A stretch of DNA of 64,000 nt, taken from Oculina patagonica. Its lineage: Eukaryota. The notes below the pieces were generated by a model. That model ran no database searches, had not been told where the DNA came from, and saw only the letters and a program-made list of their open reading frames with translations. This document shows positions 3,974 to 59,426 of the stretch, in pieces. Every line of letters starts with the position of its first letter. Position 1 is the first letter of the stretch. The position numbers and the translations under genes are program-made. The stretch is taken from NCBI RefSeq assembly GCF_052425735.1, contig NC_135760.1, forward strand, positions 14,880,001 through 14,944,000, in the 5' to 3' direction.

Positions 3974-4299
3974 CCCCGCTAGGTACCAGAGGTTTTTCTT
4001 TTTCTTGCGAGCGCAGAGAGGGGGGGGGGGGGGGGGGGGGGACGAGAGAAACTGGAAGGCGTTCTGTGTGAGACAGACAGTTCTTCGTAACATGCATGTA
4101 ACAAACCATCTGTGTTTTCGGAGGCCGAGGATAAAAGTTGTCTAGATACATGAAATGTTGATAGACAGCCACTCACATGTTTGCCCAACCCCTTTCCACT
4201 CGCCAAGGTCTGGAGAATCTGGGTACAAGTCGGCGCAAACTAAAATTCGCTCAGCAAAAAATTAGGTCATTTTGGAACCTCATTAGTGAATTTTTGAGA

Positions 4300-6382
4300 A
4301 TGTCTTCACTTCCTCTTGTGTGGTGCTTCTCCTACTCATCGCCTCCTAAACCTGCTTATCCCGTGATTACACAACTCTACGCGGAACATTTTATGGGCGA
4401 TTTCATTCTCCTCGACCAAGTGTCAATCACTGATCTGAGCGAAAACCAACGAGAAAACGTGCGAGGAATACTCTGCACCGGAGGATATGCACAATCAAAA
4501 ATCAAGCTGGATAAAGGAATTCTGGACTTGCTGCCTAATGTTAAAGTCATCAGTACTCCGAGCACAGGCGTCAATCACATTGATGTAGAAGCAGCTACTA
4601 CTCGTGGAATCCGTGTGGGTCATTCTCCTGGGCATTTTCCAAGTGACAGCGTCGCAGAATTTGCTTTTGGGCTTCTTTTGGCATCGGCAAGGTCTATTAT
4701 AGCTGCAGACAAAGTGGCAAAGTCATCTGATTTCACGTCTCTTCATTTGTCGGTAAGAAGTAAAGCAGATAGGTCCGCAATGTGTGCATATTTGTGTCAC
4801 CCAAATAAGAGCCATTTTATTTTAGATCATCCAATCTGATGGGGTTAAAGAAAATTGAGTTATTTCTGAGGCATTACGTCTGCACTTTGATCCTTTTTTG
4901 TCAGGGGGAGGGGTATAATACGGAATGACCCTAAAATATTTTTGTTTTCCACTAATTTCTTTTCTTGAGTGAAAGCAAATGAACATGAAATTATCATAAC
5001 CAAATATTATGAAATTCAAATATTGCTAAATAATTACTGATTTATAGAGCCGTTTTCACTTGAGTGTCGAAAGTAATTTGCATTTGCTTTGGTTTTGCAG
5101 TACTATGCTTAGTGACAGGTTTAAAAGTCTCACTGCACTTTCTCAGCGAATCAATACTAAAACCAAAACCAATTGTCTCTCGCTCGAGCGCGTTTTCCTA
5201 CCTGCGCTTTGTGCCGGCTATTTGCTTCATGTTTTGTTTGGTTCCTTGGATTGTCTATGTCGTTTGTGATTGGCCAGAGTAATTACTTTGCTTTTGGTTT
5301 TACGACACTCAAACTGCTCTATGCAGCATGTAACTGACAATTAACTGTTCAGAAGAAGCTAGACAATATTTTTTTATAGATGCTATGTTTTACTTGTAGT
5401 GTGGAGGTGATCTACATGCATGTACTACTCTTGACACTACTGGAGTAGCTAACTAATTTTACAAATCACCCCGGTGACCATGATACTATTCTTTGTATTT
5501 TTTTTTACCAGCATCTTTCTCAGTTAATACCTCCTGGCCAGCAAGTTACTGGTTCTACTATCGGCATTGTTGGTTTGGGGAACATTGGAAGAGCTTTGGC
5601 TGAACGTGCCAAAGGCTTTAAAATGAACATCTTGTATCACAGTCGGACTCGAAAGGAAGAGTTGGAAAAATATTTAGGTAAATATATATTGCTTGTTACA
5701 TAATTCTTATTTTAATTATCCAACTCCACTCATCGTCATCATCATTATCATCATTACCTTTGTCATCGTTATTTTCAGGTCCATTATAGCCACACAGTGT
5801 AGATAAAACATCATAAGTCTCGCCCAAGGGCTGACGGGAACTGAGAGCATATCAAACAGAATAAAATACCCAGTCCCCTTTGCCCCTTGGGAATGTCACA
5901 CAATATCATTTGGCTTTGAAATTTAAACCATATCCAGAAATATTTTTGGATTTTTTTTCCTTTCTTTTCTATTTTTTTCAGGTCTTAAATTCTGTTCAGA
6001 ATTGAAGGAGCTCTTGGAAGGGTCAGACTTTGTTGTCTTGTGTGTGCCATTCACTGCAGAAACCAAGAATTTAATTTCATCCAAAGAACTTAGTTATATG
6101 AAGTCCACGGCAATTCTGATTAATGTAGGCCGTGGGGGAACTGTCAATCATGATGATTTAACTGCGGCATTACAGAACGGCATCATCAAAGCAGCTGCAC
6201 TGGATGTGACAGAACCAGTATCACTTCCCAGAGATCACCCACTGTTAAACATGTCGAATGTGATTATTACTCCACATATTGCGACGTACACAGCAAGCAC
6301 TCAAATGAAACTGCATTTCACATCGCTTCAGCATTTAAAGGCTGGAATCAGTGGTGAAGAATTACTCTACCCAGTGAACTGA
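4300..6382 (+). CDS. D-isomer-specific 2-hydroxyacid dehydrogenase, glyoxylate/hydroxypyruvate reductase-like, copy A (339 aa)
   Basis: Exons 4300-4752, 5512-5677, 5982-6382 (1020 nt, in phase). Rossmann GIVGLGNIG; catalytic R (NVGRG), E (DVTEP) and H (TPHIA); YHSR loop suggests NADP(H) preference. Confidence 0.93.
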
Positions 6383-6718
6383 GCCAGTCTACTGATAGAA
6401 CCAGAAGGTCAATATAGTTAACAAGTTGATAGAATTTCCTCATCCCCTGTTGCATGCAAAAAGTAGTGTCTTTTGGATGACAATAAAATACGGTATCTTG
6501 TATAATTCTCTCTAGAGACCATTTTTTTAAAAAAATAATAATAAATTTAAATGATTTTGTGGGCTCAGGCTACTGGCTGACCTGTTTGGTGTAGAAATAT
6601 TTTCCAACTGACAAGAAAATAATATTGCATCAGCATGCAGAAATCATGAGACAAGTGCACATAAGCATTCATGTGCACATGTATGCATTTATTTTGGGTA
6701 AAGTCCATTGTTCTGAAA

Positions 6719-6949
6719 CAGGGCTGGAGACTAACGGTAGCCAACTAGCCAAAGGCTAATAAAATTTAGGTTTTGGCTACCAGGTTTAGCATTCCTACTA
6801 GCCATTTGGCTAGTGAAAAACTCGAAAAAGTCAACTGTTCTTGATAGAAATCAATATACCTGACTAGTGAAAAATTACTTTTGGCTAGTAAAATCTGACA
6901 TGTCACTAGCCAGTAAACCAGTGAGTTAAAAAGTTTGTCTCAAGCCCTG
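6719..6949. mobile_element. MITE with CAGGG termini and 5-bp TSD (hAT5-like)
   Basis: TIR cagggctggagac / gtctcaagccctg; tgaaa duplicated on both sides. Confidence 0.65.
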
Positions 6950-8467
6950 TGAAAGCAAATCAAAGTGGCTGTAAGCCACTGAACTCGGAAAATGAATTCA
7001 TAACAAAACATGCTTCGAACCCATAAGTTCAATCCCCTGTCTGTCAAATTATCTGCATGGTACTTTTATCACTTTCTTATACTATCAGTTACACCAAGTT
7101 AAAATTTAACTTGCAAAATTAATTTTCTATCTGAAAATAAGCCCACCCCCTCCCCTTGTAGGCTGCCAGTGCCTTTATTAGGAGATGAGGGAGAGTTGGG
7201 GGGGGGGGGGTATGGTAAGTGCCTGGAAATGATCACAACGACAATGCAATATGACTTTTGTAAATATTCCTACTCCCCTCATGAGACAAATTTTCTTGCC
7301 AAACAGTTGTTCTCAAGGCCCATTCAGCTCCAGGAATAACATATTTTCTGATCATGACGACTCAAGCAGTCCATAAAGATTTGTGTGCACAACAATATCA
7401 CTCGCAATATCTTCATAATGGATAATTATGCAAATGAAGTGATGGTTAAAAAAGGAAAGTTTATTATTTTCTTGCTGAAGGGCATGGGTCCATGTGGGAA
7501 ACAAATATCAAGGACAGATCCAGGAAAGGGGGGGGGGTAGATTGGGTGGCTAGCCATCCCCTAGATCCACCAAAAAAAATTTCAAATAAACACATACAAT
7601 ACAAAATAAGGATGATGACACTGGGTAAGGTGTAAAAATTGTTGATAACTCCCCCTCCCCGATCTATAAAAAATCCTGGGACTAAAACAAAATAATAAAC
7701 AAAACATTCAGTAACAGCCACCCCCCCCCCTGAAAAATCCGGGATTCCCCCCTCCAAACAATACAAATATATTACAAAGACTTTTAGATTTAGCATGTTG
7801 GTTTGCAGATGACCAACAGCAAAAAAGGTAAGAAAATGTCAAGAAAATAATTCAGAAAAGCATTAAGATTAAATACAAAATATAAAATCTATTGAAATTA
7901 ATGGCAAGAGTTTTCTTTTATAAAAATATATATATATATTGTTTCAAAAAATCATTCCTACCTAAAATATTTCAAAGTAATAAGGCTAACTACCATAAAG
8001 TTATGGTTATAAGCCCTGGGCTTATACAACTTCGTAACTAACTGGAGTACTATTTAGTATAGGCTAACAGGAGTACCATTTCGGCTAACCCGGGAATGGA
8101 TCACACGCCTCGCTGCCACGCACTTTGTGATGACCCCATTACAGAGTCACAGGATCCCATTGTTGCAAATCTTGAAAGAAATTACACTGTGGAATGTCTA
8201 TTTTTTCCTCTTGTTTTAATACTCTCAGATGAGGTGTCTCTTATCAATCCCACCCATTGCTACCACTGCTCATCCCAGATCCTTTTTGGGAGCTGTGTTT
8301 CACCCAAATAAATTATGGACTGCTTTGCAGTTAAAAAAGAAGTACAGTCAACTTTCTCTAATGCAGACACTGTTGGGCCTGTCATCAAATTACTGTCTTT
8401 CTTATAGAGAAAGTACATGAAAAAAAAGTAAAGTGGCTGAAAACACAGTGCCCATGCAGGGACCAAC

Positions 8468-52800: not shown

Positions 52801-54846
52801 GCTGACCATAACACTGAAGATGTAGGAGACGGGGCCTTCGGTTTGTCGTCCTTATCCGAGAAGACTAGAAAATCTTACAATTTGCAGCTGCAAATGTAAT
52901 GGCAGCACGTTGTCCCAGTTATTTTAGGACCCTGAGTGTTGGCCCGGTCTGGGAGTCGAACCCGAGACCTCCCGCGCGGCCGTCCGGCGCTCTACCAACT
53001 GAGGTAACCAGTTGGCAGTCGGCTGTCCTGCGTATTTCAGATTAACTTCAGTTCTATTGTTGCTTCTCAGAATACCAGCCAGTGATCACTACTCTGGCGA
53101 TGATCGGCAAGTTTTGTATCTTGTCCACATTTCTTACAATCTATGTGTTCACTGCTGAGCTGTTCCCAACAGTCATCAGGTGCGTGACAGGACAGAACAA
53201 ATGCTTTTGGCTATATTGCGTGACTATGTCTTTGTTCTTTAATTTACACCTTTCTACTCACATCTTAGGAACATCGGTGTTGGGGTGTCATCAATGATGG
53301 CCCGTATTGGAGCAATACTGGCCCCATATATTGTACTACTGGTAAGTAAACGGGCAAACATGCAATACAAAAATACATACTTGAGACGTAGCTATACTGG
53401 GAGCCTATTCTTGGTTTTCACGTGACGTCATCAAAATTCTAAAATCCAGAATGGCAAGGCCCCTGAGTTTTTATCCTTCACTGGCTATTATACGTCCTTA
53501 ATACATATTTTTTTGAAGGTTTTCAGCTCGATAGCATTCGCCGTCTTTAAGATAGAGCATTTTGAATTTTGGAGTTTCACGCCACACGAGATCAAAGATG
53601 GCCGCCAAAAGGCTGTCACGTGTACTTAAAAAAATGCTTTATCTTATGATTTTTAACAATCTGAACAGTTAAGATTTTGCGAGAAGTGTTTATCTGAATG
53701 TTTACTTGTTCATGATGGTGATCTGACCGCTTTTTGTAGCAGTATTTAATGCCAGATGTTTTTGTTGATTTCCGGCCGCCATGTTGGAGCCCAAGCAGTT
53801 AGGCTCCAACATGGCGATTCCATACTGTGCTCTCTAAATTTGCGTGAAACATTTTGACGAATAACTCGAGTACGGAATACCGTACAGCCCTGAGACTTGG
53901 ACGAGTAGTTTATATTGTACTTTTCTACAACCTGTAATATTCTTGATTTTTTTGACACAATAGTTTTGGATTTATTTTTTCGCAGCGTGACAGTGGCGTG
54001 ACAGTGAAAACCACCCATTATCCGGAGCGTACAACTTCCGTATATTTTGCAACGGCGTTTTAACAAGTAAAGTTATTTTTAGCTAAGCCTGTCCCGCGAA
54101 AATAACTGCTTCGGATGAAGTCAGCTACTACTTTGGGAGGAAATACTGAAAAAATGTATTCGCTATGTTAATTTCCCAGGTGGACGAGGAACTGCAGTTA
54201 CGTATTAACAGTCTATCACGAAATCGCTTGCCCTTGGCAATCCGAAACCAAACTTATCTAAAAACAACTTTACTTGTGAAAACGCCGTTTCACAGACGCA
54301 GTGTGAAAGTTGCACGCTCCGGTTTATGGCTCCTGGCAATACGTAGATCTTTGTAATGTCTCTGATTCGCTGCTACTTGCGCGCGAGAAATCAAAACCAA
54401 GAGAAAAGAGTGGAATAGGGATCCAGTAAAGCTACGTCATCAATTTTTCAAGTTGAATTTCTGACGTCTCTTTCATAGGGTTTGTTGTCTCTTGCTGGTC
54501 TCTGCCTCGTTCACATTCTCTAGTAACTTCGTTCGATAATAATTAAGGACATTTGCATTTTAATTTACGGTTTTGTCTTTCCCCCAAGGCTGAACTCCCC
54601 AATCTCAACAAAACACTGCCGCTGGTCATTTTTGGTGTTCTTGGGGTAGCCGCTGGAATAATGGCACTGTGGCTGCCAGAAACGCTATTCAGTCCCATGC
54701 CTCAAACCGTGGAGCAAGCTGAAGCCTGGGATGAAGATTACAAGATTTATTGCTGTAAACGACCTGGGCCCAAGAAATCAGACAAAAATGAAGATACGGG
54801 GACAGGCGAAGAACAAAAGCTATGCCGCATCGAAAGTCAAGTGTAA
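43843..54846 (+). CDS. SLC22-family organic cation transporter (MFS), 553 aa
   Basis: Exons 43843-44175, 46704-46850, 48666-48946, 49938-50177, 50796-50930, 51988-52073, 53071-53179, 53269-53341, 54589-54846 (1662 nt). Motifs FDDLLRLVGGFGRY, SAVSEWELIC, SDHFGRR, PESPRWL, RFGRR, ELFPTVIRN, LPET. Confidence 0.95.
45169..46617. mobile_element. CCCGGGG MITE (8-bp TSD) containing a Kolobok-like element at 45437-46480
   Basis: TSD acgcgcat at 45161-45168 and 46618-46625; inner ttaa|aggtcaaatgaacagaa ... ttctgttcatttgacct|ttaa. Confidence 0.85.
47062..47187. mobile_element. MITE, TAGCCTG family
   Basis: gagcaggctctctattcgggggcaacgt / acgttgcccccgaatagagagcctgctc. Confidence 0.75.
47579..48083. mobile_element. 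PIF/Harbinger-like MITE
   Basis: taa|gggcctcttcatatgatcccggt ... accgggctcatgtgaagaggccc|taa. Confidence 0.8.
48470..48620 (-). mobile_element. LINE (CR1/L2-like) ORF2 3'-end fragment
   Basis: Minus strand encodes FSFFNRYISDWNSLPSDVLEAQSLSS, the typical SFF..R...WN.LP C-terminal motif; (taaa)n tail-like run near 48202-48222. Confidence 0.65.
49607..49778. mobile_element. MITE, TAGCCTG family
   Basis: tagcctgcgtagcag / ctgctacgcaggcta; TSD cataaaagt/cataaaagc. Confidence 0.85.
50330..50760 (-). mobile_element. tRNA-derived SINE interrupted in its tRNA head by a MITE (about 50468-50727)
   Basis: Minus strand gcgctcacctccca|insert|atgtggcccgggttcgaatcc...; insert TIR aaggcactggcaaacg / cgtttgccacagcctt. 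Confidence 0.65.
51337..51845. mobile_element. pogo/mariner-type MITE (TA TSD)
   Basis: ta|ccgtatttactcgaa ... ttcgagtaaatacgg|ta; aataagcgccgc repeats. Confidence 0.85.
52193..52547. mobile_element. Nested pair of 9-bp-TSD MITEs
   Basis: Outer cagcctgttcc...ggaacagacta with TSD ccttttttg/ccttttatg; inner 52399-52536 ctgactcgtccccagtcgtct / agacgactggggatgagtcag with TSD ggaacaggc/ggaacagac. Confidence 0.85.
52640..53022 (-). mobile_element. tRNA-derived SINE
   Basis: Minus strand ttacctcagttggtagagcg (box A) ... gggttcgactccc (box B), then a ~300-bp body. Confidence 0.75.
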
Positions 54847-57955: not shown

Positions 57956-58340
57956 GTCTTTCTATTTCTCAAAAAAAAAAGTTAAGTTAAAGTGGAAAGA
58001 TGAGATGAGAAGACCGACATAGACAATTAGTAAAAAGAATGGGACAGTTTGGAAGGAAATTGTGCAGGGATGACAAACATAGGTATACGTAGGCAGCAGA
58101 GGTACCAAAAAGTGGCTGGGCGCCAGTCGAAAAACACATTCTAAGAACCATCAAATCAGACATTCCTGACACAGACTTAAGGCAGTCTTGTTTATGAAGA
58201 TCCACCAAGATTAAACACAACAGTCTTATTACATGGCAGGAGGTTGATTCTTGCAACAGGATCTACCGAGCAGGTGGATAACCCTAATGCCATTGTATTC
58301 TGCTTTTTGTTTTTATTTGACCCTAGTGCTGAGATTATTC

Positions 58341-58508
58341 TAGACTGTTCACAGCTCTCTATTTGTCGTATTATTGTTCGATCGTTGAACGCGGGAAAAA
58401 TCTCTCGACAGAACTGGACGTCAGCACAAACAAAAAGGGGGTGGGGCTGGGAGCGTGTTTTTCTCGCGCTCTTTTGCGTTGAAAAACAGAAAGGCTGGGA
58501 ACAGTCTT
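58341..58508. mobile_element. MITE, TAGACTG family
   Basis: tagactgttcacagc / gctgggaacagtctt. Confidence 0.6.
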
Positions 58509-58648
58509 GAGTTATCCTGGCACTAGCTAGGATTAATGTATCTTTTGAGGTAGACAATCAGAAATAGACTTTTTATCATTTAAATGGCTGAGATAGAGTT
58601 GGGTCGCTTACCGGAGTAGAGTTTGACATTGAAATGTGAAGCATATAG

Positions 58649-59073
58649 AGAAGAAATTATTCAACATGACACGAGCGTGGAACAAAGAAAAAATCTGAGT
58701 CCCCAACGGGAATCGAACCCATGGCCTCCCAGATACCGGTTGGGCGCTCTAACCAACTGAGCTACGTGAGACTCGCTGTGAGCTAAGCCATTTACTAGGT
58801 TGATATGTGACACGCGTCCTGCATACTGTTAGGATCAGCAATGTAGAAATCATCAAATGTGTAGTAAATAATAAAGATGGTAAATTTTAAGCTCGGTGAT
58901 AAATAGTGAAGAAATTATTCAACATGACACGAGCGTGGGACAAAGAAAAAATCTGAGTCCCCGACGGGAATCGAACCCATGGCCTCCCAGATACCGGTTG
59001 GGCGCTCTAACCAACTGAGCTACAAAAGACTCGTTGTGAGCTGGGCCATTTACTAGGTTGATATAAGTTCGGT
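58649..59073 (-). mobile_element. tRNA-containing partial-tandem (permuted) retroposed repeat, 258-bp unit, 12-bp TSD
   Basis: Direct repeats 58650-58806 and 58908-59064, each with tagctcagttggttagagc (box A), gggttcgattccc (box B) and a T6 terminator; TSD tgaagcatatag at 58637-58648 and 59074-59085. Confidence 0.85.
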
Positions 59074-59426
59074 TGAAGCATATAGTTACGGAGAAATAAA
59101 TTTTCTCTGCCCCGTCTTCCCCCCACAAAGAACTTAATTTATTTGTATTTTGTGTACAGATGTAATAAAAAAAACTGACCTGCTCGTGAGATTGATCGAT
59201 CCTAGTGCTCAAAGAGTGCTCAAAGAATCAAATTACACAATGCAAACGTTATCTAGGGTAAATATGGCTTTTTATTTTATAGAATCAAGAGTATCCTTAT
59301 GAGCATTAAGTACTCGGTAAATATCCTCTCTTGTTACATACTATAAACAAAAGCCTGGGTGCGAGGGAAAGAGTGATTTAAGTTTGTACAGGTAGTGAAC
59401 TGCTACTGTTGTTTTTTAGGATTGAG

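What the first reader, a model, noticed from the sequence alone, without database searches (positions are those of the whole stretch)
58637..59085. Permuted 1.6-mer of a tRNA-containing 258-bp unit inserted with a 12-bp TSD (candidate circular-RNA or retrozyme-like mobile element)
Seen: two ~157-bp direct repeats with period 258, separated by a ~101-bp unique spacer and flanked by an exact 12-bp TSD (tgaagcatatag). Each repeat carries a tRNA-like module on the minus strand (box A/B, GGT in the anticodon loop, T6 right after it). The insert starts about 50 nt upstream of the tRNA part and has no poly(A) tail, unlike an ordinary SINE. The spacer can fold as an imperfect hairpin (attgctg-atcc-taacagt) whose loop region TCCT is complementary to a downstream AGGA, i.e. 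a possible pseudoknot. Known: long TSDs typify target-primed reverse transcription, and partial-tandem inserts typify retrozymes and Penelope-mobilised elements. Inference: the unit is copied from a circular or read-through multimeric RNA, possibly processed at the tRNA mimic or by a self-cleaving motif in the spacer.
Basis: partly seen in the sequence, partly recalled or inferred. Interest (0 to 1): 0.72.

Follow-up and report, generated by a model that had tools for sequence, protein, structure and literature searches.

The report
tRNA-bearing passenger of Penelope-like retrotransposons
This is one ordinary copy of an abundant, young, protein-free jumping element of a stony coral that carries a tRNA look-alike and no self-cutting RNA, and its insertion scars match those of the coral's own Penelope-like retrotransposons, so no circular RNA is needed to explain it.

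Summary
There is a 1.6-unit direct repeat (period 258), an exact 12-bp target-site duplication (TSD), and a tRNA-like module followed by T6 on the minus strand of each unit.

It is not a local duplication. The 24-nt 3' motif occurs 946 times in this 529-Mb coral genome, and a shared terminal motif occurs 2,517 times, counting a sister family with a 262-bp unit.

Across 27 loci the copies show four consistent features:
- Variable 5' starts.
- A fixed 3' end, here called terminus A.
- Seamless partial tandems of 1.1 to 4.6 units.
- In over half the loci, an inverted 5'-truncated arm.

In all 15 composites I could interpret, including two from loci outside the set of 27, one arm ends at A and the other at terminus B, 42-47 nt further on (the "tail"). 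The whole composite is flanked by a 12-16-bp TSD.

This is the published insertion pattern of Penelope-like elements (PLEs). Two reverse transcriptase + GIY-YIG PLE families in the same genome show the same A/B asymmetry.

No hammerhead or other ribozyme is present, and there is no covariation.

No helper PLE sharing the 3' end was found.

The scan has reached the same reading many times on other DNA of this genome. I found no description of a tRNA-bearing, ribozyme-free PLE passenger in the searchable literature.

The parts
58637..58648 (.). Left copy of the 12-bp target-site duplication
   Evidence: Exact repeat D4; sequence
58649..58906 (-). Complete 258-nt unit (q1 = 58906, q258 = 58649). 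Its 3' end is terminus A of the family (...AATTTCTTC, then one base before the TSD)
   Evidence: 97% identical to the 37-unit family consensus. Terminus A is shared by about 390 ends genome-wide
58907..59064 (-). Upstream 5'-truncated unit (q101-q258), joined seamlessly head-to-tail to the full unit
   Evidence: 96% to consensus
59065..59073 (.). 9-nt filler between the truncated 5' end and the TSD; origin unknown
   Evidence: no inverted-unit match
59074..59085 (.). Right copy of the 12-bp target-site duplication
   Evidence: D4
58697..58772 (-). tRNA-like module of the full unit. It has canonical A box (TAGCTCAGTTGG) and B box (GGTTCGATTCC) and intact D, anticodon and T arms. The loop has C33 and GGT. 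The acceptor pairing is shifted and elongated
   Evidence: sequence read directly
58955..59030 (-). tRNA-like module of the truncated upstream unit
58688..58693 (-). T6 run (Pol III terminator-like) 2-3 nt after the tRNA-like module. A second copy lies at 58946-58951
   Evidence: The run is kept as T5-T8 in the sister family, the other family and metagenome copies
58864..58887 (-). Internal copy of the terminus-B motif (q20-q43, ...ACCATCTTTATTATTTAC). It is not used as an end in this copy
   Evidence: The motif occurs 2,517 times genome-wide, and about 950 of these are insertion ends

Best explanation
The locus is one 'simple' insertion of a non-autonomous retroelement copied by the reverse transcriptase/GIY-YIG endonuclease of a Penelope-like element (PLE).

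Inferred sequence of events:
1. A staggered break of 12 bp was made in the target.
2. cDNA synthesis on a tRNA-sense RNA longer than one unit was primed at the family's fixed site A (q257).
3. Synthesis ran through one full unit and stopped at q101 of the next.
4. The end was joined to the target with 9 nt of filler, and gap repair produced the TSD.

The partial-tandem form is a general property of PLE-type integration, not evidence for a circle.

The tRNA-like module plus T-run is an inherited Pol III gene-like cassette. Its A and B boxes are intact and its acceptor stem is distorted. It is kept in all related families. Because the T-run lies upstream of both fixed ends, a Pol III transcript starting at the tRNA-like head cannot be the template. 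The cassette's role is therefore unknown and inferred only; candidates are TFIIIC/Pol III binding, RNA stability, RNA processing, or an RT roadblock.

Shown here: family size, ends, TSDs, the A/B rule, absence of a ribozyme, and the same scars in autonomous PLEs of this genome. Inferred: the RNA intermediate, PLE as the copier, and any role of the tRNA-like part.
For: - Abundance: one search gave 1,875 first-look candidates and 137 scored matches at about 96% identity.
- Architecture: (27 non-redundant loci) show 5' starts from q6 to q237, a fixed 3' end at q257, and seamless arrays of 1.1-4.6 units. Sixteen loci are composites with an inverted 5'-truncated arm, and nine of these have exact 12-16-bp TSDs around the whole composite.
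- A/B rule: all 15 interpretable composites pair one A end with one B end (42-47-nt tail). This count includes L062 and L064. Chance under independence is about 3e-5.
- An independent reconstruction on contig C1 gives 10 of 12 composites with one A and one B end.
- Pattern counts (reversed-pattern controls 0): 946 for the 3' motif, 558 continuing past A, 2,517 for the B motif, 1,565 continuing past B.
- (PMC8557442) describes exactly this pattern for PLEs: 5' truncation, partial tandems, an adjacent inverted 5'-truncated copy, and a 30-40-bp tail at one end only.
- In this genome, two RVT_1 + GIY-YIG families show it too. In the PLE1 inverted pair L033/L034, one arm carries an extra tail of about 97 nt. 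In the PLE2 composite L057, one arm carries a tail of about 115 nt.
- Age: units differ from the consensus by 1 to 24 positions, and some arrays differ internally by 0-4. The family is young.
- No ribozyme.
Against: - No helper was identified. The unit shares no 3'-end similarity with PLE1, PLE2 or 8 further GIY-YIG loci, whereas published non-autonomous PLE passengers usually share the helper's 3' end. Only 3 + 8 of at least 10 PLE families were sampled, each within about 2 kb downstream of the endonuclease.
- The T6 directly after the tRNA-like module has no explained function.
- The window copy itself has neither a tail nor an inverted arm, so its PLE assignment rests on family membership.
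Confidence: 0.75

Rival explanations
1. Ribozyme-free retrozyme. Multimeric transcripts are cut at the tRNA-like module by RNase P and/or RNase Z (or another host nuclease), ligated into 258-nt circles, and copied by rolling-circle reverse transcription, giving permuted multimers.
For: - Units are seamless, permuted and multimeric.
- Coral retrozymes of similar size and genomic form exist and make circles (PMC7229834).
- Arm starts are somewhat enriched just 3' of the tRNA-like part: 26 of 47 fall in q181-q238, against about 19 expected from simple processivity decay (my tally).
- A related 268-nt unit with both a tRNA-like module and a hammerhead was reported by another note of this scan. I did not verify it.
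Against: - No self-cleaving motif is present.
- RNase P/Z products carry 5'-P and 3'-OH, not the ends used by the RtcB ligase.
- The acceptor/T stack needed by RNase P/Z is distorted.
- The fixed ends A and B do not coincide with tRNA-like boundaries.
- The circular fold is only modestly stable (z = -2.3), and there is no covariation.
- Autonomous 3-kb PLEs here give the same tandem/inverted/tail scars without any circle.
Confidence: 0.1
2. Ordinary tRNA-derived SINE mobilised by a stringent-type LINE, with twin priming giving the inverted arms and later unequal exchange giving the tandems.
For: - A tRNA-like head with A and B boxes is present.
- Copies are 5'-truncated with variable TSDs of 10-16 bp.
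Against: - Insertions do not begin at the tRNA head.
- A T6 terminator lies inside the unit, upstream of the 3' end.
- There is no poly(A) or microsatellite tail.
- Multi-unit arrays lie within a single TSD.
- The strict A/B two-terminus rule and 45-nt tail are not features of LINE twin priming.
Confidence: 0.08
3. DNA-level element (foldback/MITE-like transposon or dispersed satellite), or a local tandem duplication at this locus.
For: - Head-to-head inverted arrays resemble foldback elements.
- This locus alone looks like a 1.6x duplication.
Against: - There are more than 900 units at hundreds of loci.
- The two outer ends are different sequences, not terminal inverted repeats.
- TSD length varies from 10 to 16 bp.
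- Truncation is one-sided.
- 11 of 27 loci have no inverted arm.
Confidence: 0.04

Closest known systems
Non-autonomous passengers of Penelope-like elements (for example MRC1 / non-autonomous Chlamys in Chlamydomonas; PMC8557442)
   Same: Short, protein-free and 5'-truncated. Partial head-to-tail multimers (pseudo-LTR), an adjacent inverted truncated copy, a tail at one end, and variable TSDs.
   Different: It carries a tRNA-like Pol III cassette. No 3'-end similarity to a helper was found. The host is a cnidarian.
Metazoan non-LTR retrozymes of corals, mussels and axolotl (Cervera & de la Pena 2020, PMC7229834)
   Same: Tandem units of 150-450 bp with GC below 50% (here 258 bp, 45%). Dimers to multimers, TSDs longer than 4 bp, a coral host, and presumed PLE helpers.
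   Different: The defining type I hammerhead is absent on both strands. A tRNA-like module is present instead. circRNA has not been shown.
tRNA-derived SINEs (SINE2)
   Same: A tRNA-related module with canonical A and B boxes, high copy number, and non-coding.
   Different: The head is not at the 5' end of insertions. A T-run terminator follows the head directly. There is no LINE-type tail. Insertions are multi-unit with PLE scars.
TRIMp3 elements (Cassandra, Helenus, Ajax; PMC10886601)
   Same: A small-RNA-gene-derived cassette carried in the repeated part of a non-autonomous retroelement that is not LINE-dependent.
   Different: Those are LTR elements with a primer-binding site, a polypurine tract and fixed 4-5-bp TSDs. 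None of these is present here.

Membership tests
PLE-type insertion (non-autonomous PLE passenger) | Frequent 5' truncation with a fixed 3' end | tested here: met
   Starts range from q6 to q237; the 3' end is at q257 or q42-47
PLE-type insertion (non-autonomous PLE passenger) | Partial head-to-tail tandems (pseudo-LTR) within one TSD | tested here: met
   Arrays of 1.1-4.6 units; the window copy is 1.6 units within a 12-bp TSD
PLE-type insertion (non-autonomous PLE passenger) | Inverted 5'-truncated copy abutting the 5' end | tested here: met
   16 of 27 loci. Not present in the window copy itself
PLE-type insertion (non-autonomous PLE passenger) | Short tail extension at one end only | tested here: met
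   A 42-47-nt tail on exactly one arm in 15 of 15 interpretable composites. About 950 B ends genome-wide. The same asymmetry is seen in PLE1 and PLE2
PLE-type insertion (non-autonomous PLE passenger) | 3'-end sequence shared with an autonomous PLE of the same genome | tested here: inconclusive
   No similarity to 3 families plus 8 further GIY-YIG loci. Many PLE families were left unsampled
Metazoan non-LTR retrozyme | Type I hammerhead ribozyme in each unit | tested here: not met
   No Rfam ribozyme hit at E<=10 in the element. No CUGAnGA...GAAA on either strand, and the sense strand has no GAAA at all
Metazoan non-LTR retrozyme | Unit-length linear and circular RNA in vivo | not testable with these tools
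Metazoan non-LTR retrozyme | Short AT-rich tandem units with long TSDs | tested here: met
   258 bp, GC 0.45; TSDs of 10-16 bp
tRNA-derived SINE | Internal Pol III A and B boxes in a tRNA-related head | tested here: met
   Rfam tRNA 37-39 bits; boxes read directly
tRNA-derived SINE | Insertions begin at the head (Pol III start), and no terminator lies before the 3' tail | tested here: not met
   Starts are spread over the whole unit. T6 lies 39 nt upstream of terminus A
tRNA-derived SINE | LINE-derived 3' tail, poly(A) or a simple repeat | tested here: not met
   Ends are ...TTCTTC(AC) or ...TTATTTAC(TA), directly followed by the TSD

The most novel reading that the evidence does not exclude
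The family is a ribozyme-free counterpart of retrozymes. The tRNA-like cassette recruits host tRNA-processing enzymes to cut multimeric transcripts into unit-length RNAs that are circularised and copied by a PLE reverse transcriptase. On this reading, a tRNA mimic has replaced the hammerhead as the processing device of a circular-RNA retroelement.
Probability: 0.1. Interest if true: 0.8.

Novelty: new variant of a known kind. Interest (0 to 1): 0.5.

Why it matters
Penelope-like elements are the least understood class of retrotransposons, and their tandem/inverted/tail scars have no accepted mechanism.

A 258-bp passenger present in hundreds of young, cleanly bounded insertions gives a dense natural record of that reaction. 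The record includes two fixed priming or resolution sites 45 nt apart, one used at each side of a staggered break of about 14 bp.

If PLE dependence is confirmed, this would also be a Pol III-type (tRNA-derived) cassette carried by a PLE-dependent element. That would extend the SINE (LINE) and TRIMp3 (LTR) idea to a third retroelement class. It would also show that coral 'retrozyme-like' repeats need not contain a ribozyme.

The locus itself is an ordinary family member.

Tried and rejected
1. Ribozymes: Rfam at E<=10 and a regex for hammerhead cores on both strands found none.
2. Structure: the dimer fold has z = -3.7 and the circular monomer z = -2.3. RNAalifold on 24 units found 0 of 69 pairs with compensatory change. 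Power is low because copies are 92-99.6% identical.
3. Helper search: BLAST and motif searches of the unit, the sister unit and the other family against 30 + 1 + 8 GIY-YIG loci found no shared 3' end and no tRNA-like module. The 1371-aa GIY-YIG family is not a PLE; it has an SF1 helicase domain.
5. Empty site or haplotig for this locus: none found. The left flank is itself an older repeat.
6. Searching the genome for Hammerhead_3, to locate the 268-nt tRNA + hammerhead family noted by another agent, scored nothing.
7. A specific RNA 5' end or RT stop at the tRNA-like module: 26 of 47 arm starts lie in q181-q238. About 19 are expected from a simple fall-off rate estimated on contig C1, so the excess is marginal (z about 2) and I make no claim.
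8. Stronger conservation of the tRNA-like part between families: only modest (78% against 66-69%).
9. Snap-back (copy-back) origin of the inverted arms: rejected, because the arms have unequal length and different outer ends.

Full report
**Observation**

The stretch is as described.
- Window 58645-58806 and 58903-59064 are a 162-nt direct repeat, 94% identical, with period 258.
- An exact 12-mer lies at 58637-58648 and again at 59074-59085.
- Each repeat holds a tRNA-like module on the minus strand (58697-58772 and 58955-59030). ARAGORN calls them Thr-GGT. Rfam tRNA scores are 36.9 and 38.8 bits, above the gathering score of 29, but only over model positions 6-65, so the acceptor stem is not matched.
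- A T6 run follows each module.

Read on the minus (tRNA-sense) strand, the insert is: TSD, 9 nt of filler, unit positions q101-q258, a full unit q1-q257, one base, TSD. I number positions (q) on window:58649-58906 read on the minus strand.

**It is a dispersed, young family, not a local duplication**

A search of the window's own 529-Mb genome with one unit gave 1,875 first-look candidates and 137 scored matches at about 96% identity on all large contigs. Notes of this scan say the genome is a stony coral.

Whole-genome pattern counts, allowing one mismatch, with reversed-pattern controls of 0:
- 946 copies of the 24-nt 3' motif.
- 558 copies in which the unit continues past q257 into the next unit. 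That leaves roughly 390 ends at q257.
- 2,517 copies of a 24-nt motif at q20-q43.
- 1,565 of those continue beyond it. That leaves roughly 950 ends there.

The excess of the second motif comes from a sister family with a period of about 262 bp. It is 95% identical over q2-q247 and differs only around q248-q258 (L064).

Full units are 92-99.6% identical to the 37-unit consensus. In absolute terms they differ from it at 1 to 24 positions, and some arrays differ internally by 0-4. Two metagenome contigs hold copies at 95% and 91% identity.

**Anatomy of insertions**

In 27 non-redundant loci:
- The tRNA-sense arm starts anywhere from q6 to q237.
- It ends at a fixed point, terminus A (...AATTTCTTC, often plus AC).
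- Arrays are seamless and 1.1 to 4.6 units long.
- Eleven loci are simple, like the window copy.
- Sixteen are composites in which an inverted, 5'-truncated arm abuts the 5' end.

In every composite I could interpret (13 of the 16, plus L062 and L064, 15 in all), one arm ends at A. The other ends at terminus B (...TTATTATTTAC, often plus TA), which is 42-47 nt further along the tandem sequence. The whole composite is flanked by one direct TSD of 12-16 bp, exact in nine loci. If end types were independent, 15 of 15 mixed pairs would have a probability of about 3e-5.

An independent reconstruction on contig C1, from the coordinates listed, gives about 42 insertions. Ten of its 12 composites have one A end and one B end.

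**What this matches**

Craig et al. 2021 (PMC8557442) describe Penelope-like element insertions in these terms:
- strong 5' truncation;
- partial tandems forming pseudo-LTRs;
- an inverted 5'-truncated copy adjacent to the 5' end;
- a 30-40-bp tail at one end only.

They state that this is not seen with LINE target-primed reverse transcription.

I checked the same genome for its own PLEs. GIY-YIG gives 860 candidates. Two families have RVT_1 plus a C-terminal GIY-YIG domain.
- PLE1 has a minimal hammerhead core about 70 nt from its 3' end. It sits in microsatellites and includes an inverted pair (L033/L034) in which one arm stops at the usual terminus and the other carries about 97 further nt.
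- The PLE2 composite in L057 shows the same pattern, with a tail of about 115 nt shared with two other copies.

The passenger's scars are therefore those left by this genome's own PLEs.

**What it is not**

- No ribozyme family matches inside the element at E<=10.
- Neither strand of the consensus dimer has a CUGAnGA...GAAA core, and the sense strand has no GAAA at all. The defining feature of retrozymes is therefore absent.
- Folding is unremarkable for a viroid-like RNA (circular monomer z = -2.3).
- RNAalifold on 24 units finds no compensatory change in 69 predicted pairs. Divergence is too low for this to weigh much.
It competes with another small hairpin that uses the same TCCT/AGGA bases, and the window copy carries a disrupting change. 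I see nothing above chance.

**The tRNA-like cassette**

- The A and B boxes are canonical, and the D, anticodon and T arms pair.
- Position 33 is C.
- The acceptor pairing (GAGTC.../...GACTC) is shifted by two bases and elongated, so it is not a functional tRNA shape.
- A T5-T8 run follows the module in this family, the sister family, a metagenome copy and a more distant family of about 238 bp next to L024. That distant family is homologous along the unit and ends in the same TTATTATTTAC motif.
- Between families the cassette is only slightly better conserved than the rest (78% against 66-69%).

The T-run lies upstream of both fixed ends, so a Pol III transcript starting at the tRNA-like head cannot be the template. 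Its function is open. Kojima's TRIMp3 elements (PMC10886601) are the nearest precedent for such a cassette outside SINEs.

**Mechanism (inferred)**

1. A PLE endonuclease makes a staggered break of about 14 bp.
2. A tRNA-sense RNA longer than one unit is copied from site A at one DNA end. In composites it is also copied from site B at the other DNA end.
3. The two cDNAs are truncated at variable points and joined head to head.
4. Simple copies, like this one, use one end only.

On contig C1 about 15% of arms exceed one unit, so the mean arm is about 150 nt and most insertions are dead on arrival.

Arm starts are somewhat enriched in q181-q238: 26 of 47, against about 19 expected from that fall-off rate. 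The excess is too marginal to claim a block or an RNA 5' end at the tRNA-like part.

**Limits**

- No helper sharing the 3' end was found among 3 families and 8 further loci.
- No empty allele of this locus exists in the assembly.
- Literature searches found retrozymes, non-autonomous Chlamys and TRIMp3, but no tRNA-bearing, ribozyme-free PLE passenger. This covers only the open library.

**Earlier notes of this scan**

After reaching the PLE reading, I found that many notes on other DNA of this genome reach the same reading for units of 235, 259, 261 and 268 bp. They agree with my tests but are not independent support.

**Verdict**

The family is best read as a tRNA-bearing, hammerhead-less passenger of Penelope-like retrotransposons, a new variant of a known kind. 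The circular-RNA idea is neither needed nor excluded.

Noticed in passing
L033/L034 (G000:C7:6716934-6722779); also L031, L032, L035-L038: Autonomous PLE family (RVT_1 + zinc finger + C-terminal GIY-YIG) with a minimal hammerhead core (CTGAAGA...GAAAC) about 70 nt from its 3' end. It is inserted in (TA)n and (AGAT)n microsatellites. In an inverted pair, only one arm carries a tail of about 97 nt.
   Followed up: partly
L061 (G000:C3:1319000-1328000), ORF 4004-8116 minus; also L039-L048: [quoted passage not shown] It is a multi-copy element of unclear class.
   Followed up: partly
L024:535-830: A second tRNA-like-bearing family with a unit of about 238 bp, a Thr-AGT-like module and T8. It is inserted as about 1.2 units starting right after the T-run and ends in ...ATTATTATTTACTC, the same terminal motif as terminus B.
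   Followed up: partly
window 58338-58510: The left flank of the insertion is an older MITE-like repeat of about 170 bp with 33-nt imperfect inverted arms (58323-58355 / 58494-58526). It has 256 first-look relatives at 70-84% identity.
   Followed up: no
window 52951-53006 (minus strand): Another degenerate tRNA-related stretch, 74% identical to the D-to-T-arm part of the unit. ARAGORN does not call it. It is probably a different tRNA-derived repeat.
   Followed up: no
L004 (C1349) vs L009 (C14): The same insertion, with the same flanks and the same 14-bp TSD, is present on a small contig and on a chromosome-scale contig with different unit numbers (1.0 vs 2.2 units in one arm). This is array-length change after insertion, or an assembly collapse of a haplotig.
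   Followed up: no
L064:1245-1345 and L030:1127-1278: Rare irregular junctions inside arrays (q57 joined to q238; q61 joined to q8). They look like template jumps near terminus B.
   Followed up: no
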